Positions 2,301-58,349 of a stretch of 64,000 bases of DNA are shown here, piece after piece. The notes under the pieces were generated by a model. It had not been told where the DNA came from. It saw only the letters and a program-made list of their open reading frames with translations, and ran no database searches. A program made the position numbers and the translations under genes. Numbering within the stretch: the stretch's first letter is position 1; the number at the start of each line of letters is the position of its first letter. The stretch spans positions 310,001 to 374,000 of IMG/VR virus record IMGVR_UViG_3300028558_000016; one strand, written 5' to 3'.

Positions 2301-4094
2301 ATGAAAAGATCAACTAAACATTTCGGAGATTATTCCGATGCGGAGTTAAAAAGCATGAGTCCTGAGCAACTCATTGCTATCATCTTGGAAGGTCAGAACG
2401 ATGATAACTTCATCATCATGACAGACTCTTACAAAATGACTCATCACCTGCTTTATCCTAATGGATTAAGAAGGGTTTACTCATATATGGAACCACGCGG
2501 CGGCGAAATGCCTTACACCGTATTCTTTGGATTGCAGTATTACATCAAAAGGTATCTTGCTGGAAGAAGAATCACCAAAGAGAAAATCGAAGATGCACGT
2601 CAAGCAAACATTGCACACTTTGGATTTGATTGCTTTGATGATACAATGTGGTATCACATATTAAATAAGCACGATGGTAAACTTCCATTGAGAATTAAAG
2701 CTATTCCTGAAGGAACTCCGATCGCTGTTAAGAATATCGTGATGGATATGGAAAACTTAGACCTTGATAATTGTGCAGCATTGACAAACATCACAGAAAC
2801 ATTGTTAATGAAAATCTGGGCAACATGTACTGTCGCAGCTTACAATAGAATCATCAAGGAATTAATAACAAAGAATCACGCGATCACTTCAGACCTTCCA
2901 GCATTCTTGATTGATTACATGCACCATGATTTTGGTTACAGAGGAACTTCATCAGAAGAGACTGCACGCTTAATGGCTGCGGCTGCAATGACAAGTTTTA
3001 AAGGAACTGACACAATGGGCGGTTTAAGCTTAATCAAGAAATATTATTCTCCTGATGGAGCAACATGGTCTGAATGCATGGCAGGTTTCTCTGTTATTGC
3101 GTCTGAACACTCAGTTGTTTGTTCATACGGTGGAAGACACAAAGAAGCGAAATCATACCTTGACATTATAAACAAGGTTAAGAACCATCCTAAAATTAAG
3201 ATAGCAAAACCATTGAGCGGAGTAATTATTCTATCTTTGGTGTCTGACACTTATAACATCTACAATGTGTCTAAGAAAATTCTTAAACAATTGGAAAAAG
3301 AATTTATTGGATGGACAAACGATAACGGCATTCCAATTAAGATTGTTATTCGTCCTGACTCGGGAGTTCCTGCTAACGTGTTATTTGGATATAACGATGT
3401 TGTTAAAGGAATGGTTGCTGACAAAGATGCTTTAGCAGTAGCACCAATCGACCTTTGCAAAAGAGTTGCAGATGACATGTCGATAACTTTAGAAGAAGGA
3501 ACAGAGCTTGTGACCAAAGGAGTATTTGAAATACTGTTCGATGAATTTGGATCAACAACAAACACTAAAGGTTACAGAGTATTCCATCCACAAATAGGAG
3601 TATTACAAGGTGATGGCGTTAAGTATACTGTCATCGATGAATTCCATGAGATCATGAAAACGAAAGAATACATGATAGACATCATGATGCTTGTTGTTGG
3701 TTCAGGCGGAAAAAATCTACAGGCTCACGATCGTGATGAACAAAAATGGGCAATCAAAGCAACTGAGGTTGGCATCGATAATGACTCAGTAATGGGTGGT
3801 ATAGAAACAGTTCAAATAGAAAAAAATCCAATCACAGATCCTGGAAAGAAATCTAAAAAAGGAGATCTTAAGCTTGGCAAGAAAATGCTTAAGGTAGGCC
3901 CTGATTACGATTTCACAAAAGAATGGATGAACTTTAAAACCTTCCAAGAAGGTGAAGAAGGATTTGATACTGTAACAAACCTTTTAGTTCCTGTATTTGA
4001 AATGGGAGAAATCCTCGTTGAATACGATTTTGAAGAAGTGAGAGCGAACAGTGCGGTAGTATATCCTCAAATTAAAAAAACGGCTTTAGCCTAA
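2301..4094 (+). CDS. nadV: Nicotinamide phosphoribosyltransferase
   Basis: TDSYKMTH, HDFGYRG, ASEHS, VSDTY, IRPDSG, QGDG, KNPITDPGKKSKKG motifs. Confidence 0.95.
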   Translation: MKRSTKHFGDYSDAELKSMSPEQLIAIILEGQNDDNFIIMTDSYKMTHHLLYPNGLRRVYSYMEPRGGEMPYTVFFGLQYYIKRYLAGRRITKEKIEDARQANIAHFGFDCFDDTMWYHILNKHDGKLPLRIKAIPEGTPIAVKNIVMDMENLDLDNCAALTNITETLLMKIWATCTVAAYNRIIKELITKNHAITSDLPAFLIDYMHHDFGYRGTSSEETARLMAAAAMTSFKGTDTMGGLSLIKKYYSPDGATWSECMAGFSVIASEHSVVCSYGGRHKEAKSYLDIINKVKNHPKIKIAKPLSGVIILSLVSDTYNIYNVSKKILKQLEKEFIGWTNDNGIPIKIVIRPDSGVPANVLFGYNDVVKGMVADKDALAVAPIDLCKRVADDMSITLEEGTELVTKGVFEILFDEFGSTTNTKGYRVFHPQIGVLQGDGVKYTVIDEFHEIMKTKEYMIDIMMLVVGSGGKNLQAHDRDEQKWAIKATEVGIDNDSVMGGIETVQIEKNPITDPGKKSKKGDLKLGKKMLKVGPDYDFTKEWMNFKTFQEGEEGFDTVTNLLVPVFEMGEILVEYDFEEVRANSAVVYPQIKKTALA

Positions 4095-6858: not shown

Positions 6859-7361
6859 ATAAGCTCGAATATAGAATGTATGGAATAGTTCCTTACAACA
6901 TTTCAGAAATACAAAAAGGAATCCAATTTGGACATGCTGTTGTAGAATACTCGTTGAAGTATTTTAAGAACGAAGACTTTCAACAGTGGGCCAAGAAGCA
7001 CAAAACATTCATGGTTATGAATGGAGGAACAACCAATATGGGAGAAGGAACAATTCAAGGAAGACCCGATTGGATGGTTGAAGAACTTAAAGGGTCATTA
7101 AATAAATACGCCGATTTACTTTCCAAAAATAAAATCAAATGCGCTTATTTCTTTGAGCCAGACTTAAATGATGCTTTAACTGCCGCGGTATTTCTTGCAG
7201 ATGAAAGAGTTTTCGACAAGATTAAATATCCTGATTATGTTCCTCTTTCTTTTGATTTAGCAAAAAATGATCCACAACACGAGAAAGAATGGGTCAAATC
7301 TATAGGAGGAAAACAAAATGTTTTCCTTCGTGAATTCATATCTAAACTAAGATTTGCATGA
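6855..7361 (+). CDS. PTH2-like (peptidyl-tRNA hydrolase type 2 fold) phage protein
   Basis: QKGIQFGHAVVEY ... FFEPDLNDALTA pattern. Confidence 0.6.
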   Translation: MNKLEYRMYGIVPYNISEIQKGIQFGHAVVEYSLKYFKNEDFQQWAKKHKTFMVMNGGTTNMGEGTIQGRPDWMVEELKGSLNKYADLLSKNKIKCAYFFEPDLNDALTAAVFLADERVFDKIKYPDYVPLSFDLAKNDPQHEKEWVKSIGGKQNVFLREFISKLRFA

Positions 7362-8044
7362 AAACGACAGACAAATACGTATTATTTTATACTGAGGTAT
7401 TTTCTCAGTGGCATCCTTCCAATTTTGAAGTAGGAGGTAAAAAATTCTGCACAGCAGAACAATTCATGATGTATTTCAAAGCATTAACGTTCGGTGATCA
7501 AGAGATTGCAGACAAGATATTAGCAACAAATAGTCCACGTGAACAAAAGAAACTTGGACGCGCTGTTAAAGGATTTGATGCTGTTAAATGGAATGCAATA
7601 GCCAAGGAAGTTGTATTCAAAGGAAACAGAGCTAAGTTTCAACAGAATCCAGAAATGTTCGAACAATTAATGGCAACAGGACACAAAGAACTTGTTGAAG
7701 CTTCCCCTTATGATACTATATGGGGAATAGGCTTTGATGAAAATGCTCCTGAAGCTCTTGATAAGTCAACATGGAATGGAACAAATTGGCTTGGCGAAGT
7801 ATTAACAAAGCTTAGAGATGTTCTTAGAAGAGAACAGACAATTCAAAACATAGTGAAACATGGTGAAGCTGAATTGGAAAAATTTGCCAGGGATTATCCA
7901 AATGACATAGGACGATTGTATGAAAGCTATAAAAAATTGAAAACACAATCTTGGTCTGAAGATTTTTTAAGAGGATATTTAGGAGCTATAACAGATTTAA
8001 TTATTATTAAAAAAGGACATTGGGGAGACTCATTTGTAAAATAA
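7358..8044 (+). CDS. NADAR/YbiA family protein
   Basis: FSQW, TAEQFMM, KKLGRAV, LVEASPYDTIWGIG, GTNWLG motifs. Confidence 0.92.
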   Translation: MKTTDKYVLFYTEVFSQWHPSNFEVGGKKFCTAEQFMMYFKALTFGDQEIADKILATNSPREQKKLGRAVKGFDAVKWNAIAKEVVFKGNRAKFQQNPEMFEQLMATGHKELVEASPYDTIWGIGFDENAPEALDKSTWNGTNWLGEVLTKLRDVLRREQTIQNIVKHGEAELEKFARDYPNDIGRLYESYKKLKTQSWSEDFLRGYLGAITDLIIIKKGHWGDSFVK

Positions 8045-8238
8045 TGGGAAATAAAAACAGATTATACAGAAATACCGATGATTGTTTTATCGGTGGAGTT
8101 TGTTCTGGAATATCAGACAAGCTTGGAATAGATCCAACATACGTTCGTGTATTGTGGGCTCTTTTCATATTCCTATTTGGATATGGATTATTGTTATACA
8201 TCCTCCTATGGATTATAATGCCTGAAAATGAAAACTAA
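8044..8238 (+). CDS. PspC domain protein
   Basis: RLYR..DCFIGGVCSGI...GIDPTYVR...YILLWIIMP. Confidence 0.9.
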   Translation: MGNKNRLYRNTDDCFIGGVCSGISDKLGIDPTYVRVLWALFIFLFGYGLLLYILLWIIMPENEN

Positions 8239-8500
8239 ATACGTCATAACTTTCCTTTTGAGCCTGACGATCTGTTTGTGTTCAGTATTGTATTTCCAAT
8301 TTTATTGGATGTTATTCATGCCTTTATTGGCCACAAATTTATTTCTTCCATTCTATATGATGGATCTTAAATCGGTAGAAACAAAGATGGAAATAATATT
8401 CTTCTTCTTGGTTCCGTTTGCAAGCGTTTTGTGGATTTTTGTAGATGGACTTCCTGGAACAATTTCTTACTTTGGAGATAAATGGAAAGAATTGAAATGA
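8228..8500 (+). CDS. Small membrane protein
   Basis: Hydrophobic ORF. Confidence 0.55.
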   Translation: MKTKYVITFLLSLTICLCSVLYFQFYWMLFMPLLATNLFLPFYMMDLKSVETKMEIIFFFLVPFASVLWIFVDGLPGTISYFGDKWKELK

Positions 8501-8667
8501 CAGCTTTATTAATCATATACATTATCGGTGCCTTGTTATTTCTATTCCTACTTTCATTAGATGCCAGCGCATTTAAACCTAAACATATAATACTAATAAC
8601 AGTATTTTGGTTTCTGTGGTTGCTTTACTTCTTGGTCATTTCAGTGACGCACTTCAAGAGAAAATAA
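8497..8667 (+). CDS. Small membrane protein
   Basis: Two hydrophobic segments. Confidence 0.5.
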   Translation: MTALLIIYIIGALLFLFLLSLDASAFKPKHIILITVFWFLWLLYFLVISVTHFKRK

Positions 8668-8681
8668 TAGATATATAAGTC

Positions 8682-9605
8682 GTGAAAAGATTCCACGATT
8701 ATAGCACATTCAACGGCCTTGAAAATCTAAAACAGATTGTTGCCAAGAAAGATCCTTCCATGAGCGAAGACCTCATGAAGGCACTATTTCCATTAAGAGA
8801 TAAGAACATTGGCAAAACATTGAAGGACATCATAAAGAGATTTGAAAAATCCGCTGAATACGATACACCGAACAAATGGTTCAGTCCAAACAAGTATAAC
8901 ACTTTTATGGAATACTTTCAAAGAGGATTAACCGACAAGAAGAAAGAAGAAATAGAAGCAACCATAGATCAATATCTCATGGTCATGCCTTCTGAATCAA
9001 ACATTGAATCAATAGGAAATTTCTCAGACACTTCATCGATATTAAGATTGAAGAAACCGACTAAAGACGTAGTTAAGGATTTAATGGATTTTGGAATAAG
9101 TGATGTGAGCACATTAAACTTTATAAGCCTAAAGCTTCTCAAATGTTATTACCACAGGGTGCATTGCCCAGTAAGCGGAACTATACAAAAGATAACATTC
9201 ATTGGAAGAGAAGAACCGTTGTTTGGAGACAATTCCCTATGGGTGGTTGAATTCAATTCAGAAGAAGGAAGAATTTACATGCTTGTAGTTGGAGAACTTT
9301 CTATACAGGATTTTAATTTCAACTTCAAAGAAGGAGACAAGGTTAACAAATTTGAAGAGCTCGGAAAATTCAATTGGGGTTCTCAGCTCGTTTTAATATA
9401 TGCAAAAGATTCATTCGTAAGCGAACCGTTGATCATAGAAAAGGAGAAATATTTTGTTGGTGATGGAATATTTAATAAGACAAAAATAGTTCAAGGCGAT
9501 ATTCTTAATTCAATGCCAATTGACCAGATAGGAAATGGACAAAGAAACGGAACAATATACGGAGATGATATTTTAAAAGCACCAACAGGAGCAAACATAT
9601 TTTAA
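8682..9605 (+). CDS. Phosphatidylserine decarboxylase-like protein
   Basis: F..YFQR.L, YYHRVHCPVSG, ELGKFNWGSQLVL (GxFxxGS autocleavage motif); GTG start. Confidence 0.7.
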   Translation: MKRFHDYSTFNGLENLKQIVAKKDPSMSEDLMKALFPLRDKNIGKTLKDIIKRFEKSAEYDTPNKWFSPNKYNTFMEYFQRGLTDKKKEEIEATIDQYLMVMPSESNIESIGNFSDTSSILRLKKPTKDVVKDLMDFGISDVSTLNFISLKLLKCYYHRVHCPVSGTIQKITFIGREEPLFGDNSLWVVEFNSEEGRIYMLVVGELSIQDFNFNFKEGDKVNKFEELGKFNWGSQLVLIYAKDSFVSEPLIIEKEKYFVGDGIFNKTKIVQGDILNSMPIDQIGNGQRNGTIYGDDILKAPTGANIF

Positions 9606-9943
9606 TGGAACAAGCAAAGATCGATAAGATAAACAGCATAATCGCAGATGCAAAGAATAAAATTAAATTTCTTGAATGTGACGGTTCAACGAGAGTATTT
9701 GATTACCTTCTAACTAAGAATAACATCAAACATACTGTAATGGTTGGAACTGCATCACTGGAAGATAAAGAGATGCTACATTATTGGATCAAAATTGATG
9801 ACATGATATTGGACCTAAAATCAAAGATGTGGTTTGGAGATGAAGCCTCAGAAGGATTATTCAAAACAAGCAAGGTCAAGTATAACGGTAAACCAATAGA
9901 GCTAAATACCTCCGAATTGATGTACCATATTTTAACAAGTTAA
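9605..9943 (+). CDS. Hypothetical protein (Cys-His-Asp, transglutaminase-like pattern)
   Basis: LECDG...HYWI...ILD. Confidence 0.45.
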   Translation: MEQAKIDKINSIIADAKNKIKFLECDGSTRVFDYLLTKNNIKHTVMVGTASLEDKEMLHYWIKIDDMILDLKSKMWFGDEASEGLFKTSKVKYNGKPIELNTSELMYHILTS

Positions 9944-9980
9944 ATTTTCGAGGCTCAAAAATATCTTTTATATTTGTTGC

Positions 9981-10208
9981 ATGAGCAATGAATTAATAAG
10001 AATACTTAAAGACATAACACATGACAATGAAGAAAAAAGACTTCAAAAAGCGAGTGAATGTTCTGATGGAATAAGCTATTACAATTGTAATGCTTTACCA
10101 ATGGTAGATCAATTAGCAAATGAACTTTCCAAGTTGTCTGAAGTTGAATTGTCATTGGCCTTAAGAATTCTCGTTAGAAAGACTCAGAAAAAGGCCCAGA
10201 AAAAATAA
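9981..10208 (+). CDS. Hypothetical protein
   Basis: ORF downstream of a TATATTTG box. Confidence 0.55.
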   Translation: MSNELIRILKDITHDNEEKRLQKASECSDGISYYNCNALPMVDQLANELSKLSEVELSLALRILVRKTQKKAQKK

Positions 10209-10233
10209 ATTTTTTAGTTTCAGAAATAGTTCC

Positions 10234-10241
10234 TATATTTG
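10234..10241 (+). promoter_or_regulatory. Bacteroidota-type sigma-A -7 box (TAnnTTTG)
   Basis: TATATTTG; same box recurs near 9969, 16490, 23375, 28358, 47648 and 54525 upstream of genes. Confidence 0.7.
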
Positions 10242-10244
10242 CAC

Positions 10245-10406
10245 TGATCATAGTTAAATGGCTTTATGCAATATATGTGTAGCTGTTCTACCTTCATCAG
10301 ATGCAAGGACAAAAATTTAGGTGCGGTTATCTCCTTGCTAAACTATCGCATAGGTCAGGATTGCATTGAGAAATGCAATTGTATGGACAGACTTTAGGTA
10401 TGATCA
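10245..10406 (+). ncRNA. Candidate structured ncRNA
   Basis: Terminal stem TGATCATA/TATGATCA, several internal helices, GAGA-tetraloop hairpin, no ORF, own promoter box. Confidence 0.55.
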
Positions 10407-10448
10407 TAATTTTAGAAACAAAAAAGGTATATAAGAATATAACAAGTC

Positions 10449-10520
10449 ATGAAAACAACATTGTCATTAAGTCTAAGTTTGTCGCTATCCTTATCAGGAT
10501 GGACTAACCGGGCTATGTGA
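10449..10520 (+). CDS. Leu/Ser-rich attenuator leader peptide MKTTLSLSLSLSLSLSGWTNRAM
   Basis: 12 alternating Leu/Ser codons using 7 different codons, followed by a terminator and a Leu/Ser tRNA array. Confidence 0.85.
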   Translation: MKTTLSLSLSLSLSLSGWTNRAM

Positions 10521-10549
10521 TAATTTCTGACTAATAAGAAATTTGAATG

Positions 10550-10580
10550 AACCCGGTGGAAACATCGGGTTTTTTATTTT
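10550..10580 (+). terminator. Attenuator terminator
   Basis: AACCCGGTG-GAAA-CATCGGGTT + T tract; 5' arm CCCGGT also complementary to ACCGGG (10507-10512) in the leader. Confidence 0.85.
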
Positions 10581-10588
10581 ATACACAT

Positions 10589-10671
10589 GCCCATGTGGCG
10601 GAATTGGTAGACGCGCCGGTCTTAGGAACCGGTGCCTTTAAGGCGTGCAGGTTCGAGTCCTGTCATGGGTA
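10589..10671 (+). tRNA. tRNA-Leu(TAG)
   Basis: Cloverleaf, anticodon arm CCGGT-CTTAGGA-ACCGG, long variable arm. Confidence 0.95.
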
Positions 10672-10752
10672 CAACGTGGTGAAAGTACATTCAGACTGTA
10701 CCATCAGATTTTAGCTACTGATGAAGCATTTGTGGTGATGCTGCTGCGAATT

Positions 10753-10839
10753 GGTGAGATGTCCGAGTGGTTTAAGGAGCAACCCTGGAAAGGTTGTATA
10801 CGGGAAACCGTATCGTGGGTTCGAATCCCACTCTCACCG
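10753..10839 (+). tRNA. tRNA-Ser(GGA)
   Basis: CAACC-CTGGAAA-GGTTG, long variable arm, G73. Confidence 0.95.
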
Positions 10840-10849
10840 CAAATAAAAT

Positions 10850-10934
10850 GGAAGGTTGGTAGAGCGGTCTATTGCACCAGTCTTGAAAACTGGAGATCCT
10901 ACGGGGTCCGTGAGTTCGAATCTCACACCTTCCG
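10850..10934 (+). tRNA. tRNA-Ser(TGA)
   Basis: CCAGT-CTTGAAA-ACTGG, long variable arm, G73. Confidence 0.95.
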
Positions 10935-10939
10935 CAATT

Positions 10940-11027
10940 GGAGAGCTACTCAAGTTGGTTAAGAGGCGCGTTTGCTAAACGTGTAGGACGAGAAATCGTT
11001 GGGTGGGTTCGAACCCCACGCTCTCCG
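10940..11027 (+). tRNA. tRNA-Ser(GCT)
   Basis: CGCGT-TTGCTAA-ACGTG, long variable arm. Confidence 0.95.
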
Positions 11028-11038
11028 CAGAAAATTCT

Positions 11039-11121
11039 GCCCCCATGGTGGAATTGGTAGACACGCAGGACTTAAAATCCTGTGCCCTTAGGGCGTACGA
11101 GTTCGAGTCTCGTTGGGGGTA
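11039..11121 (+). tRNA. tRNA-Leu(TAA)
   Basis: CAGGA-CTTAAAA-TCCTG. Confidence 0.95.
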
Positions 11122-11128
11122 CATAAAT

Positions 11129-11210
11129 GCCGAGTTGGCGGAATTGGTAGACGCGCTGGTCTCAAACACCAGTGACGAAAGTCGTGTGGGTTCGAGTCCC
11201 ACACTCGGTA
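11129..11210 (+). tRNA. tRNA-Leu(CAA)
   Basis: CTGGT-CTCAAAC-ACCAG. Confidence 0.95.
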
Positions 11211-11226
11211 CAAGAAGAAGAATAAA

Positions 11227-12690
11227 ATGGAAAATGATAAAAAATATTGCTTGGTGATGTTTCCTTATCCGTCTGGAGATGGATTGCACATTGGACATTG
11301 CTACAACTACTTGATAGTTGATAGCTATTGTCGTTGGATGAAGAGAAAAGGAATTGAAGTGTTTCAACCATTTGGTTATGACGCTTTCGGTTTGCCTGCG
11401 GAGAATTATGCGATCAAGCATAACAGAGATCCAAAAGAAGTCACCTATGAAAACATAGAAAATTTCAGAAGGCAGATGAAGAGATTGGATACTAATTATG
11501 AAGAGAAGTTAATTACAGCTGATCCATCTTATTTCAAATGGACACAATGGTTGTTCACAAAGATGTTGGAGAAGGGAATTGCTTACAAGAAATTTCATCC
11601 AGTAAACTTTTGTCCATCTTGCGCAACAGTGATTGCCAATGAGCAGGTGAAGGAAGGAAAATGTGAGAGATGCAATTCAGTTGTTGAGATGAAAAACTTG
11701 AATCAATGGTTCTTCAGAATAACAGACTACACAGATAGGTTGATCAAGAACTTGCAATGGTTGGATTATCCCGAGAAAACCAAGAAGCAACAATTACATT
11801 GGTTGGAGAAGATGAAAGAAAACAAGATCGATTGGTGTGTGTCAAGACAGAGAAAATGGGGATGTCCAATTCCTGTTGAAGGAGAGGAAGATACTTTGGA
11901 CACATTTGTTGACAGCTCATTTTACTACTTGAGATTCTTGACGGATTCTGAAGATGAATTCTTGCCAAGAGAAAAATATAAGCAGGTTGATTTGTACGTC
12001 GGAGGAAATGAACATGCTTGCATGCATTTGATTTATGCAAGATTTGTGAACATGTTCTTGTATGACTTGGGAATTGTTGAACAAGAAGAACCGTTCAAGA
12101 AGTTGATTCATCAGGGAATGATCAAGATGAATGGAACAAAGATGTCCAAGTCTATCGGCAATGTTGTTAATCCGGATGGGTATGATCCAGATGAATTGAG
12201 ATTTTACTTGATGTTCATTGGACATTATTTTGATGGCGGAGATTGGAACGATCAAAACATTGTTGGCATAAGAAAATTCTTTGCACGATGGGATAAGCTT
12301 ACTTTTAGAGAAGCAAAGGAAGGAATTGAATCTATGGATTTGACTGAATTTGAAAACCAGATCGATGGTTATGTGAAAGCTTTCAAGTTCAATAAGGTTG
12401 TTAGTTCATTCATGGAATTTTACAACAATAATAGCAGCAGAAACTTTGACAAGGAAACCAGATTGAAGTTGAGAAGAATGTTGGAGTGTTTTGCGCCAAC
12501 AAGATTTTCTAAAGATGAAAGGCCTCCAGTTGGCATGGATGAATTAAGAAGAAAATCCAATGAGTTGTCTGAGAACGTAAACAAGATTGAAGTAATGGTT
12601 AATAAAATTTTTAAAGATGTTGAACAAAAAGAAAATATCACCGGAATATCCGAGAATACCTCACTTGATGGGGAAGTCAAATCTGTATGA
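11227..12690 (+). CDS. leuS: Minimal leucyl-tRNA synthetase (no CP1 editing domain)
   Basis: MFPYPSG-LHIGH, GYDAFGLPAEN, DWCVSRQRKWG, DTFVDSS, GGNEHA, KMSKS; only 487 aa. Confidence 0.9.
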   Translation: MENDKKYCLVMFPYPSGDGLHIGHCYNYLIVDSYCRWMKRKGIEVFQPFGYDAFGLPAENYAIKHNRDPKEVTYENIENFRRQMKRLDTNYEEKLITADPSYFKWTQWLFTKMLEKGIAYKKFHPVNFCPSCATVIANEQVKEGKCERCNSVVEMKNLNQWFFRITDYTDRLIKNLQWLDYPEKTKKQQLHWLEKMKENKIDWCVSRQRKWGCPIPVEGEEDTLDTFVDSSFYYLRFLTDSEDEFLPREKYKQVDLYVGGNEHACMHLIYARFVNMFLYDLGIVEQEEPFKKLIHQGMIKMNGTKMSKSIGNVVNPDGYDPDELRFYLMFIGHYFDGGDWNDQNIVGIRKFFARWDKLTFREAKEGIESMDLTEFENQIDGYVKAFKFNKVVSSFMEFYNNNSSRNFDKETRLKLRRMLECFAPTRFSKDERPPVGMDELRRKSNELSENVNKIEVMVNKIFKDVEQKENITGISENTSLDGEVKSV

Positions 12691-13321
12691 CGATGACATT
12701 GAGATCAATGTTGAGTTAGGGTTTGATGCCTTTGTACAAGAGAAGGTTGATGGAGCAAACTGTGGAATCAGTTGGTTCGATGGACCCATTCTCAGAAACA
12801 GAACCCATGTGTTAAGAAAGGGATTTGAAAGAGACACTCCAGCAAAGAAACAATTTGTTCCAGCTTGGAATTGGTTGCATGAAAGAGAAGATGACTTGAA
12901 GGAGATGATGAAGAAGTGGAATGGACAGATAACTGTTTATGGAGAGTGGATGCTTGCAAAACATTCTATTGGATATGAGAAGCTTCCAGATTATTTTCTT
13001 GCTTATGACATTTGGTCGTGTGAAGAAAACAAGTTTGTTTCTCCGAAGGAATGCAAGGAACTTTTGAATGGGACTGGCATAAGATGGATCGAAGCAGAAA
13101 GAATAAGCATTCAATCGTTCTCTGATTTGAAGTCAGTTCTTGATGTTCCCTCTAAGTACAGAGATGGAATTAAAGAAGGAATAGTTATCAAGAAAACTGA
13201 CGAAGACGATAAGTGGATAGAGAAGACTTTCAAGGTTGTTAGAAAAGATTTTGAAAGGGCTGATGAAAGCTGGAATAAGAAAAAGCTTGAAAAGAATAAG
13301 CTGATAAAGAGGAGTGCCTGA
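12617..13321 (+). CDS. RNA ligase (ATP-dependent nucleotidyltransferase)
   Basis: YPRIPHL, QEKVDGAN (motif I), YGEW, FLAYDI, EGIVIK. Confidence 0.85.
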   Translation: MLNKKKISPEYPRIPHLMGKSNLYDDDIEINVELGFDAFVQEKVDGANCGISWFDGPILRNRTHVLRKGFERDTPAKKQFVPAWNWLHEREDDLKEMMKKWNGQITVYGEWMLAKHSIGYEKLPDYFLAYDIWSCEENKFVSPKECKELLNGTGIRWIEAERISIQSFSDLKSVLDVPSKYRDGIKEGIVIKKTDEDDKWIEKTFKVVRKDFERADESWNKKKLEKNKLIKRSA

Positions 13322-13393
13322 GTGGCTGAAAGGACCGGTCTCGAAAACCGGCACACCCAAAAGGTGTCGTGAGTTCGAATCTCACCTCCTCTG
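13308..13393 (+). tRNA. tRNA-Ser(CGA)
   Basis: CCGGT-CTCGAAA-ACCGG; overlaps the end of the RNA ligase ORF. Confidence 0.93.
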
Positions 13394-13432
13394 CATTTTT
13401 TAATTTGATGATTTTTTTGTAAATTCACTATC

Positions 13433-13738
13433 ATGAATGATGAAGATAAAAAAATAAAGGGATCATTGTTTTTCTTGTACATCGGCAAGCTTAAAGAATT
13501 GGGTTTGATAGAAGGTGGCGCAGGAGATTTGACCATGAAAGGTTTTGACATTGCCATTGATGCCTATAACAGTGGACATAGATTGTCAGATGAGGAGATT
13601 AGTAATTTTCTCGAAGCCGCTCCTGGAATGGACGATGACGACACAATAGAGGCAGCATTTGGAATGATAGCCAAGATGCAAGAAATTGGATTTGATGGAA
13701 TGAAAGAATTGGTTGAACGAGTAAAGAAAACATTATGA
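13433..13738 (+). CDS. Hypothetical protein
   Basis: ORF. Confidence 0.6.
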   Translation: MNDEDKKIKGSLFFLYIGKLKELGLIEGGAGDLTMKGFDIAIDAYNSGHRLSDEEISNFLEAAPGMDDDDTIEAAFGMIAKMQEIGFDGMKELVERVKKTL

Positions 13739-14445
13739 AAAAGAAATTAGTGGTGTTTAGCGGTGCAGGAGTTTCTGCTGAGAGCGGAATTCCTACATTC
13801 AGAGATTCAAATGGTCTTTGGGAAAACCATAAGATGGAAGATGTTGCTACTCCAGAAGGATGGGAGAAAAACAGAGAGCTTGTTCTCAACTTCTACAATC
13901 TTATGAGAACGAAACTCAAAGCAGTTGTTCCGAATAAAGCTCACAATATAATTGCAGAGCTTGAAGAACATTTTGAAGTTACAGTCATCACACAAAACAT
14001 AGATGACTTGCATGAGAGAAGCGGCTCAAAGAAGGTCATACATCTTCATGGAGAATTAATGAAGAGCAGAAGCACATTTAATCCAAATCTAAAATACGAG
14101 TGTACTGGAAATATAAACATAGGTGACAAATGTGAGAAAGGTTCTCAATTGAGGCCTGACATAGTTTGGTTTCATGAAAATGTTTATCACCTTGACACTG
14201 CGGCTGAATTGGTAGAACAGTGCGATATTCTTCTTGTTGTTGGAACTTCATTAAATGTTTGGCCTGCAGCAGGATTGTTATATGTGACGAAACCGGAAAC
14301 TGAAATATATTGCATTGATCCAAAAACAGTTGTTGGAAGTGATATTCAAGTTACTCACATAAAGAAGAAAGCGAGTGAAGGGATGGAGAAATTTAAAAAG
14401 ATTATTCTCGAGAAAAAAGATAAGAAAGAAAATTGCTGTTTATAA
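13735..14445 (+). CDS. cobB: Sir2/CobB NAD-dependent deacylase
   Basis: GAGVSAESGIPTFR, TQNIDDLHE, HLHG, LRPDIVWF, VGTS. Confidence 0.95.
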   Translation: MKKKLVVFSGAGVSAESGIPTFRDSNGLWENHKMEDVATPEGWEKNRELVLNFYNLMRTKLKAVVPNKAHNIIAELEEHFEVTVITQNIDDLHERSGSKKVIHLHGELMKSRSTFNPNLKYECTGNINIGDKCEKGSQLRPDIVWFHENVYHLDTAAELVEQCDILLVVGTSLNVWPAAGLLYVTKPETEIYCIDPKTVVGSDIQVTHIKKKASEGMEKFKKIILEKKDKKENCCL

Positions 14446-48012: not shown

Positions 48013-48020
48013 ATTTGCAG

Positions 48021-48092
48021 AACTCCAAGTGGGGATCGAACCCACGACCAAAGGTTTTAGAGACCTACGTTCTACCACTGAACTATTGGAGC
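48021..48092 (-). tRNA. Amber suppressor tRNA (anticodon CUA)
   Basis: GCTCCAA-TA-GTTC AGTGGTA GAAC-G-TAGGT CTCTAAA ACCTT-TGGTC-GTGGG TTCGATC CCCAC-TTGGAGT-T. Confidence 0.9.
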
Positions 48093-58275: not shown

Positions 58276-58349
58276 GGCTTGGCCGGAATCAGGGGACTGC
58301 GGATTCTAAACCCGCTGAACCGTGGGTTCGACTCCCACCCAGGCTACCA
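58276..58349 (+). tRNA. Second CUA-anticodon tRNA with degenerate D-arm
   Basis: GGCTTGG/CCAGGCT-A-CCA acceptor, GCGGA-TTCTAAA-CCCGC arm, GTGGG-TTCGACT-CCCAC T-arm. Confidence 0.7.

What the first reader, a model, noticed from the sequence alone, without database searches (positions are those of the whole stretch)
10245..10406. Promoter-driven ~160-nt multi-helix RNA with possible pseudoknot, upstream of the attenuator
Seen: begins 4 nt after TATATTTG. Closing stem TGATCATA/TATGATCA; CTGTTC(10283-10288)/GGACAG(10385-10390); GCAAGGA(10303-10309)/TCCTTGC(10332-10338), whose loop GTGCGGT can pair with ATCGCAT(10345-10351) as an H-type pseudoknot; ATTGCATT-GAGA-AATGCAAT hairpin. No ORF. I cannot assign it to a known family.
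Basis: seen in the sequence. Interest (0 to 1): 0.6.

Follow-up and report, generated by a model that had tools for sequence, protein, structure and literature searches.

The report
Conserved RNA insert in phage tRNA leader
A 162-base non-coding piece sits between the promoter and the leader-peptide attenuator of a giant phage's Leu/Ser tRNA operon; only one related phage shares it, it has changed far less than neutral DNA, and it probably folds as a closed RNA domain at the start of the leader transcript, but its job is unknown.

Summary
The window lies in a 482-kb phage genome. In it, seven tRNA clusters each follow the same cassette: a 42-nt promoter box, an A-rich "box2", a leader peptide rich in the amino acids of the tRNAs that follow, and a terminator.

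The finding is a 162-nt insertion between promoter box and box2 of the Leu/Ser cassette. Five paralogous cassettes aligned and three orthologous cassettes in related phages lack it. One relative (L020) has it at the same site.

It is 94% identical between the two phages. Third codon positions of flanking genes are 65-69% identical, and a spacer inside the same cassette is about 70%. Selection at the nucleotide level is therefore likely.

It is not protein-coding, matches no Rfam family, is single-copy, and has no MITE-like relatives. The terminal pairing is significant (about 0.2% of shuffles). All four substitutions in the proposed helices keep pairing through G·U, which favours a + strand RNA. 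There is no compensatory change, folding z-scores are weak, and no RNA data exist.

Best reading: a self-contained 5' domain of the leader transcript, not a discrete 160-nt RNA. Function unresolved.

The parts
9981..10208 (+). 75-aa ORF just upstream, with its own TATATTTG box at 9969. Among the Leu/Ser cassettes examined, only the two phages that carry the element have it.
   Evidence: The model is three helices with no Pfam or PDB fold match. A 66%-identical homologue occurs elsewhere without the element.
10202..10243 (+). Conserved 42-nt promoter box shared by the tRNA cassettes. It ends in TATATTTG (10234-10241), which fits the TAnnTTTG -7 motif of Bacteroidota promoters.
   Evidence: Repeated at five other + strand places in the genome (four by BLAST at 90-100% identity, the Pro/Phe/Val one by pattern search with 5 of 24 core mismatches) and in weaker form at a seventh, minus-strand cassette, always before a tRNA cassette. 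It is 95% identical in L020. Promoter function is inferred, and TAnnTTTG is not enriched in the window overall.
10245..10406 (+). The 162-nt inserted element (the finding).
   Evidence: Absent from the same site in L013/L016, L008, L017 and four paralogous cassettes; the Pro/Phe/Val cassette, not in that alignment, has a different ~85-nt insert there. Present in L020:3268-3432 at 93.9% identity. Single copy.
10245..10258 (+). 5' strand of closing helix P1/P1b. It pairs with 10393-10406.
   Evidence: Pair probabilities 0.54-1.0. Significance. Invariant in L020.
10393..10408 (+). 3' strand of P1/P1b (10393-10406). It overlaps the second TGATCATA copy (10401-10408) and the 10-bp palindrome TATGATCATA (10399-10408).
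   Evidence: The 8-bp repeat is both direct and inverted, so a target-site duplication and a closing stem cannot be told apart.
10283..10288 (+). P2 5' strand (CTGTTC). It pairs with 10385-10390.
   Evidence: G10386 is A in L020, turning U.G into U-A. P2 is part of the MFE in L020.
10303..10338 (+). P3 hairpin (10303-10309 pairs with 10332-10338). Its loop segment 10321-10327 could pair with 10345-10351 as a pseudoknot.
   Evidence: A10309 is G in L020, turning A-U into G.U. The pseudoknot strands are invariant, so it is untested.
10359..10380 (+). P4 hairpin: 9 bp with a GAGA loop.
   Evidence: Pair probabilities 0.57-0.93. In L020 the loop changes length while the stem is kept, and G10359 becomes A, turning G.U into A-U.
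10415..10434 (+). Box2 (GAAACAAAAAAGGTATATAA), the second conserved box of the cassette. In cassettes without an insert it lies 10-25 nt after the promoter box.
   Evidence: Found only in the six + strand tRNA cassettes of the genome, with a variant in the seventh.
10449..10520 (+). Leader ORF MKTTLSLSLSLSLSLSGWTNRAM. Its Leu and Ser codons match the tRNAs downstream.
   Evidence: 96% identical in L020.
10549..10582 (+). Intrinsic terminator of the attenuator. tRNA-Leu follows at 10589.
   Evidence: A compensatory A-U to G-C change at the stem base in L020 is visible in the alignment.

Best explanation
The element is a lineage-specific insertion of about 150-162 nt. It entered the conserved promoter-leader cassette of the phage's Leu/Ser tRNA operon in the common ancestor of this phage and the L020 phage, and it has since been kept by selection on the nucleotide sequence.

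It is transcribed from the cassette promoter as the first ~160 nt of the leader RNA on the + strand. There it folds into a self-contained multi-helix domain. The 5'-terminal bases pair with the last bases of the insert (P1). That leaves the A-rich box2, the Leu/Ser leader peptide and the terminator to work as in cassettes without the insert.

Most likely mode of action (inferred): a cis-acting 5' domain that changes the fate of the leader transcript. It would sequester the 5' end, stabilising the ~330-nt terminated leader RNA, and it may add a second input to the attenuator.

Shown: the insertion, its conservation, its non-coding nature, its single-copy state and its compatibility with the fold. 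Inferred: transcription, the fold itself and the function.
For: - Insertion: an alignment of nine cassettes shows the extra block only in the window and L020. Promoter box and box2 are otherwise 10-25 nt apart.
- Constraint: the element is 93.9% identical to L020. Third codon positions of three flanking ORFs are 64.5-69%, IGR 9944-9980 is 76%, and the roughly 33-nt spacer between leader stop and terminator in the same cassette is about 70%. The binomial probability is 3e-15 at a neutral difference rate of 0.31 and 4e-7 at 0.20.
- Not coding: third positions of the 43-codon frame are as conserved as the rest. Two of three codon changes are non-synonymous, and indels of +2 and +1 change the C-terminus.
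- RNA on the + strand: the four substitutions inside proposed helices all keep pairing through G.U/A-U exchange. These would be A/C mismatches on the other strand. The P4 loop changes length while its stem is kept.
- Fold: the L020 MFE equals the P1-P4 architecture. In the window that architecture is 0.9 kcal/mol above the MFE.
- Terminal helix at the insertion borders: p about 0.002.
- No terminator before 10549, so the element belongs to the leader transcript.
- The identical sequence is present in contigs of four further rhizosphere runs, and no skipping joint over 10245-10406 was seen.
Against: - Only two sequences exist and there is no compensatory double change.
- With 2:1 transitions, four of four pair-keeping changes has a probability of only about 0.13.
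- Folding z-scores are weak (-1.1 and -1.5) and no better than the minus strand.
- P1 is lost in the MFE of the full 341-nt leader.
- No RNA-seq run holds the region, so neither the transcript nor its 5' end has been seen.
- High identity could also come from a later lateral spread of a site-specific mobile element rather than from selection.
- The 8-bp TGATCATA repeat also reads as a target-site duplication.
- No specific link to the attenuator was found. A 10-bp complementarity to the leader stop region is at chance level by my estimate of about 1.6 expected.
Confidence: 0.45

Rival explanations
1. A selfish or neutral MITE/PATE-like insertion. A small non-autonomous mobile element landed in the palindromic target TGATCATA, duplicated it, and spread recently between the two phage lineages. 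Its high identity would then reflect youth, not function. It is co-transcribed only by accident.
For: An 8-bp direct repeat at both borders, an imperfect terminal inverted repeat and empty orthologous sites. The empty site in L017 (CAATGATAAAG...) aligns with one repeat copy. The size is typical of MITEs.
Against: It is single-copy in the 482-kb genome by blastn-short, nhmmer and a covariance model. No element with these termini and size exists in 185,579 species genomes or in IMG/VR, and no 20-mer match either. The junctions are identical in both phages, while the adjacent 75-aa ORF and the in-cassette spacer have diverged 20-30%. This rival therefore needs two hits at one site or a recombination tract that happens to end at functional borders. 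The substitutions that did occur avoid breaking helices.
Confidence: 0.22
2. An independent trans-acting RNA, such as a regulatory sRNA or a decoy against a host RNA-targeting defence. It would be released from, or act as part of, the terminated leader. This resembles attenuator-derived sRNAs, or the stable non-tRNA RNAs co-transcribed with the T4 tRNA cluster.
For: Sequence conservation is at tRNA grade even in the predicted single-stranded linkers: stretches of 47 and 48 nt show no change. The element sits in an island of tRNA, aminoacyl-tRNA synthetase, RNA ligase, Sir2 and NADAR genes. The full leader is well structured, with z = -3.08.
Against: It has no terminator or processing signal of its own. 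No complementarity to the phage tRNAs exceeds that of shuffles. The 12-13-nt exact matches in the genome are at the chance level. No Ro/TROVE partner is encoded. No RNA data exist.
Confidence: 0.15
3. A DNA-level operator or roadblock. The palindromes (ATTGCATT-N4-AATGCAAT and TATGATCATA) would bind a dimeric regulator, perhaps the co-occurring 75-aa protein. The regulator would block transcription from the cassette promoter.
For: A perfect 8-bp inverted repeat and a 10-bp palindrome lie downstream of a promoter. The 75-aa ORF co-occurs with the element in both phages.
Against: The half-site spacing changes by 2 bp in L020, which an RNA loop tolerates but a dimeric DNA binder does not. Palindromes are not enriched over shuffles (p = 0.14). 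The 75-aa protein has no HTH or any known fold, and a homologue occurs without the element. The G.U-type changes are strand-specific.
Confidence: 0.08
4. A gene for a 40-43-aa Cys-rich micro-protein (10266-10397).
For: An ATG-started frame is open in both phages, with 32 of the first 34 residues identical.
Against: Third codon positions are about 95% conserved, against 65-69% in real genes. Changes are mostly non-synonymous, the C-terminus is frameshifted and two Cys are lost. The only Pfam hit is far below threshold.
Confidence: 0.03

Closest known systems
Riboswitch aptamers and T-box leaders (structured 5'-leader domains closed by a P1 helix, often before aminoacyl-tRNA synthetase or amino-acid genes)
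   Same: It sits in the 5' leader of an operon for tRNAs and a LeuRS-like enzyme. It is a multi-helix junction closed by pairing of its two ends, and its sequence is highly conserved.
   Different: No Rfam model matches, even at E <= 10 in a 186-nt search. No expression platform overlaps P1. The downstream terminator is governed by a leader peptide. Only two homologues exist and there is no covariation.
Co-transcribed MITEs of bacteria (ERIC, Correia/NEMIS) and IS200/IS605-derived PATEs
   Same: About 100-160 bp with terminal inverted repeats. Inserted between promoter and gene, transcribed with it and folding into RNA helices. Orthologous sites are empty.
   Different: It is single-copy, with no family in the phage, in 185,579 species genomes or in IMG/VR. 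Its divergence is far below the neutral rate.
Stable RNAs 'species 1 and 2' (rnaC/rnaD) of the phage T4 tRNA gene cluster (from my own knowledge)
   Same: A small non-tRNA RNA made from the same transcription unit as a phage tRNA cluster, with unknown function.
   Different: Here it lies at the 5' end, before an attenuator. A distant blastn against 50,697 phage records found no similarity. Processing is unknown.
5'-terminal stabiliser stem-loops (ompA 5' UTR, T4 gene 32) and attenuator-derived sRNAs such as rnTrpL (from my own knowledge)
   Same: The predicted 5' end is base-paired from about the first transcribed base. The terminated leader could accumulate.
   Different: It is much larger and more sequence-constrained than a simple stabiliser hairpin. 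No transcript data exist.

Membership tests
Any Rfam 15 family (riboswitches, T-box, ribozymes, 6S, YrlA, leaders, sRNAs) | Covariance-model score at or above the family's gathering score | tested here: not met
   Only tRNAs pass in the window. At E <= 10 on 801, 241 and 186 nt, only chance snoRNA-type rows of 15-19 bits appear.
Riboswitch / cis-regulatory aptamer | A fold conserved with covariation across homologues | tested here: inconclusive
   Two sequences only. All 84 cells (42 pairs) are paired, with 4 one-sided changes and 0 compensatory changes.
Riboswitch / cis-regulatory aptamer | An expression platform (terminator or start-site sequestering helix) coupled to P1 | tested here: inconclusive
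   No terminator lies next to P1. The 3' strand of P1 ends 42 nt before the leader ATG. Alternative long-range pairings in the 341-nt fold are at chance level.
Riboswitch / cis-regulatory aptamer | Specific ligand binding | not testable with these tools
   Needs in-line probing or ITC.
MITE / PATE | Terminal inverted repeats | tested here: met
   13 of 14 terminal positions pair; 36 of 20000 shuffles reach this.
MITE / PATE | Target-site duplication | tested here: inconclusive
   TGATCATA stands at 10245 and 10401. It is part of a palindrome, so the direct and inverted readings coincide. In L020 the second copy reads TGATCAAA.
MITE / PATE | Several copies, or a family elsewhere | tested here: not met
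   (own genome). (IMG/VR and GTDB species genomes). (phage records).
Independent sRNA gene | Own terminator or a defined 3' end | tested here: not met
   The only terminator-like site in 9900-10700 is at 10549-10572.
Independent sRNA gene | A discrete transcript | not testable with these tools
   The three runs listed as RNA hold only 0.04 of the sampled words. All runs laid were DNA contigs.
Small protein gene | A conserved frame with changes biased to synonymous sites | tested here: not met

The most novel reading that the evidence does not exclude
The element is a new class of compact, tRNA-grade-constrained RNA. It would be an aptamer, a ribozyme or a protein-binding decoy that gives a phage's codon-matched Leu/Ser tRNA attenuator a second sensory or protective input. 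One example is sensing a signal of tRNA damage by host defences, or titrating such a factor.
Probability: 0.15. Interest if true: 0.75.

Novelty: new member of a known kind. Interest (0 to 1): 0.4.

Why it matters
By itself the element is an orphan: a conserved, probably structured leader RNA of unknown function in an uncultured giant phage. Its value comes from its setting.

The phage groups its tRNA genes by amino acid. Each group follows a copy of one promoter-leader-terminator cassette, and the leader peptide is rich in the amino acids, and at least for Leu/Ser uses the codons, that those tRNAs serve. This looks like feedback control of phage tRNA supply by ribosome stalling.

The 162-nt insert is one of several modular RNA pieces added to these leaders. 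If it adds stability or a second signal, it shows how phages tune such circuits. If it is an exapted mobile insertion, it is a clean example of that process.

The empty and filled orthologous sites make the question directly testable with reporter constructs.

Tried and rejected
- Rfam with gathering and lax thresholds, on the window, the L020 copy and the other cassettes: nothing but tRNAs and chance rows.
- megablast and blastn against phage records: no match.
- Exact and degenerate pattern scans of IMG/VR, JGI metagenomes and GTDB genomes, for the promoter box, the hairpin, a core 20-mer and the two termini. Only the window's own record and the L013 contig came back.
- The search for related loci with the LeuRS-like protein: none. 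Relatives were reached instead through protein word searches and exact-protein look-ups. Several places had no DNA on hand.
- Reads: four further DNA runs hold the identical element, so they give no variation and no RNA evidence.
- Duplex search against all 55 phage tRNAs: no better than shuffles (the first try, timed out).
- Y-RNA idea: no TROVE/Ro gene and no YrlA match.
- Homology to the inserts of other cassettes: not significant (p = 0.13-0.95).
- Local palindrome enrichment: p = 0.14.
- Covariance model R1 over the whole genome and the relatives' loci: only the two known copies.
- The 75-aa neighbour as regulator: no fold or family match.
- My first L020 coordinates (3260-3424) were offset by 8 nt, so searches are superseded.

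Full report
**Setting.** The window is bases 310001-374000 of a 482,156-bp virus record from a rhizosphere metagenome. The genome has about 36% G+C and at least 55 tRNA genes. The finding lies just upstream of a run of Leu and Ser tRNA genes at 10589-11211, with more at 13308 and 14450. Downstream genes include a LeuRS-like class I synthetase (11227-12690), an RNA ligase and a Sir2 protein. A NADAR protein and a phosphatidylserine decarboxylase lie upstream.

**The observation.** As an isolated 162-nt RNA the + strand folds to -39.1 kcal/mol with z = -1.09 against dinucleotide shuffles. The minus strand gives -33.9 kcal/mol and z = -2.02. The total folding energy is therefore not remarkable. 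In the ensemble, the closing helix (10245-10252 with 10399-10406, extended by 10254-10258 with 10393-10397) and the 3' hairpin (10359-10380) are robust, with pair probabilities of 0.54-1.0. P3 reaches 0.33 and P2 0.12. A 43-codon ATG frame (10266-10397) exists, so 'no ORF' is inexact.

**What the surroundings show.** The 42 nt before the element (10202-10243, ending in TATATTTG) recur at four other + strand places in the genome by BLAST at 90-100% identity. A looser search adds a fifth, the Pro/Phe/Val cassette, with 5 of 24 core mismatches. A seventh, weaker copy lies on the minus strand. Each copy precedes a tRNA cluster.

Each copy is followed by a second conserved box (GAAACAAA...GRTATATAR, 'box2'). 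Box2 occurs nowhere else in the genome. After it come a short ORF and an intrinsic terminator.

The short ORFs are rich in the amino acids of the tRNAs that follow:
- LSLSLSLSLSLS before the Leu/Ser tRNAs.
- RIIRIRRR before Ile/Arg.
- NNNNQQQYQQNNY before Asn/Gln/Tyr.
- ADCADE before Asp/Cys/Glu/Ala.
- HIHKHQIWH before Trp/His.
- IIPQFQFVVPF before Pro/Phe/Val.
- TTGTTTTTKTGKGK before Met/Thr/Lys/Gly/Asn.

For Leu/Ser, the leader codons TTG, TCA, TTA, AGT, CTA, TCG and TCC match seven of the eight anticodons in the operon. These are leader-peptide attenuators in front of tRNA genes.

**The element is an insertion.** In four of the other cassettes, promoter box and box2 are 10-25 nt apart. The Pro/Phe/Val cassette has a different ~85-nt insert at that site. 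Orthologous Leu/Ser cassettes were recovered through LeuRS homologues of 82-83% identity. They come from three related phages: L013/L016, L008 and L017. All have the same promoter box, box2, nearly the same leader peptide and the terminator, but no 162-nt block. The nine-sequence alignment places the extra block precisely between 'TTTGCAC' and 'TAATTTTAGAAAC'.

The borders carry TGATCATA at 10245 and again at 10401. The 3' junction TATGATCATA is a 10-bp palindrome. The same bases therefore read as a closing stem, as terminal inverted repeats, or as an 8-bp target-site duplication. Terminal pairing of 13 of 14 positions is reached by 36 of 20000 shuffles, even allowing 3 nt of slack at each border.

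**A homologue, and constraint.** The 75-aa ORF just upstream (9981-10208) has only two relatives in the protein collection. The contig of one of them (L020, a Logan assembly) carries the element at the same site, at 3268-3432. Identity between the two phages, by segment:

| Segment | Identity |
|---|---|
| Third codon positions of the three flanking ORFs | 64.5-69% |
| Intergenic 9944-9980 | 76% |
| Spacer between leader stop and terminator hairpin | about 70% |
| Promoter box | 95% |
| Box2 + UTR | 95% |
| Leader ORF | 96% |
| tRNA genes | 96.5-98% |
| The element | 93.9% (155 of 165 columns) |

Ten or fewer differing columns out of 165 has a probability of 3e-15 at a neutral difference rate of 0.31, and 4e-7 at 0.20. 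A neutral-looking spacer lies inside the same cassette. The identity is therefore best explained by purifying selection rather than by a recently exchanged block, although a later site-specific spread cannot be excluded.

**Coding or RNA.** In the 43-codon frame, third positions are as conserved as the others. Of three changed codons, one is synonymous. Indels of +2 and +1 alter the C-terminus and remove two Cys. A second, 20-codon frame, read from the sequence, shows only non-synonymous changes. The constraint is therefore on the nucleotides.

- A-U to G.U in P3.
- G.U to A-U in P4.
- U.G to U-A in P2.
- A-U to G.U at the loop-closing pair of P4.

On the complementary strand these would be A/C mismatches, which favours a + strand RNA in the direction of the promoter box. 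The change in P4 loop length with the stem kept argues against a dimeric DNA operator.

The limits are clear. There are only two sequences and no compensatory double change. The chance that four random substitutions all keep pairing is about 0.13 (my estimate). The pseudoknot strands are invariant and so untested.

**Family membership.** No Rfam family matches at any threshold tried. The element is single-copy by blastn-short, nhmmer and a covariance model run over the whole genome. No phage record matches. A core 20-mer, and the two termini at the right spacing, are absent from IMG/VR and from 185,579 species genomes. It is not significantly similar to the inserts of the other cassettes. No Ro/TROVE gene is present. 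No complementarity to the phage tRNAs exceeds that of shuffles.

**Transcript.** No terminator follows the element. The only terminator-like site in 9900-10700 is at 10549-10572. If the box is the promoter, the element is the 5' part of a ~330-nt leader, which folds with z = -3.08. It would not be a discrete 160-nt RNA. No RNA run holds the region. Four further DNA runs carry the identical sequence, with no form lacking it.

**Verdict.** This is a real feature: an inserted, selectively maintained, non-coding block. It is most probably a self-contained structured domain at the 5' end of the leader RNA of the Leu/Ser tRNA attenuator operon (confidence 0.45). Its mechanism is inferred, not shown.

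Rivals:
- A young MITE-like insertion without function (0.22).
- A trans-acting or decoy RNA (0.15).
- A DNA operator (0.08).
- A micro-protein gene (0.03).

It belongs to no described family.

Noticed in passing
window 10202-10582; G000 123435-123688, 386000-386604, 391912-392311, 413544-413914, 417108-417750, and minus strand about 8625-9000: Seven tRNA clusters are grouped by amino acid. Each is preceded by the same promoter box, box2, a leader peptide rich in exactly those amino acids, and a terminator. For Leu/Ser, the leader uses the codons read by 7 of the 8 downstream tRNAs. This looks like leader-peptide attenuation of phage tRNA genes. Two literature searches found no description of it.
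   Followed up: partly
G000 391958-392042 and 392070-392156 (Pro/Phe/Val cassette), 413632-413768 (Trp/His), 386080-386186 (Asn/Gln/Tyr): Other cassettes carry a different recurring leader insert: a GATTGC/GCAATC stem around TTCAGCAWAACAAA, followed by TGAARAA. The two Pro/Phe/Val copies are clearly homologous, with a compensatory stem change (GGTTGC/GCAATC against GGATGC/GCATCC). The Trp/His copy encloses a tRNA T-arm-like hairpin. There is no Rfam match.
   Followed up: partly
window 10673-10752: The 80-nt spacer between tRNA-Leu and tRNA-Ser is conserved in L017, with an apparent compensatory change in a hairpin (GTAC..GTAC against GCAC..GTGC). It contains a CTGATGA..GAA stretch. It is deleted in L020. 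No Rfam hit.
   Followed up: no
window 48020-48092 (-), 58276-58349 (+); G000 374278-374351: There are three tRNAs with anticodon CUA, which ARAGORN labels 'Pyl'. This suggests amber suppression or TAG recoding in part of the genome. Large ORFs in the window are open under table 11.
   Followed up: no
window 7358-14445: An island of tRNA- and NAD-related genes: NADAR, phosphatidylserine decarboxylase, a shortened LeuRS-like class I synthetase (487 aa, with hundreds of ~410-450-aa relatives at 65-87% identity in metagenomes), RNA ligase and Sir2.
   Followed up: partly
window 9944-10208: The 75-aa ORF has its own TATATTTG box at 9969, and the sequence after the 112-aa ORF stop resembles a diverged copy of the promoter box. 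In L013 and L008 the cassette follows the 112-aa ORF directly. The ORF and the element may have arrived in the same lineage.
   Followed up: partly
L004 1785-1865 (G000 about 417396-417476): A tRNA-like sequence lies between the Ile/Arg terminator and tRNA-Ile. Rfam's tRNA model scores it at 37 bits but ARAGORN misses it. Several other tRNAs in L002-L004 are likewise found only by Rfam.
   Followed up: no
window 10198 (run X4, contig record 10): A 1720-nt Logan contig matches 10198-10460 and then departs upstream of the promoter box. This is probably an assembly jump between the repeated 42-nt boxes rather than a different genomic context.
   Followed up: no
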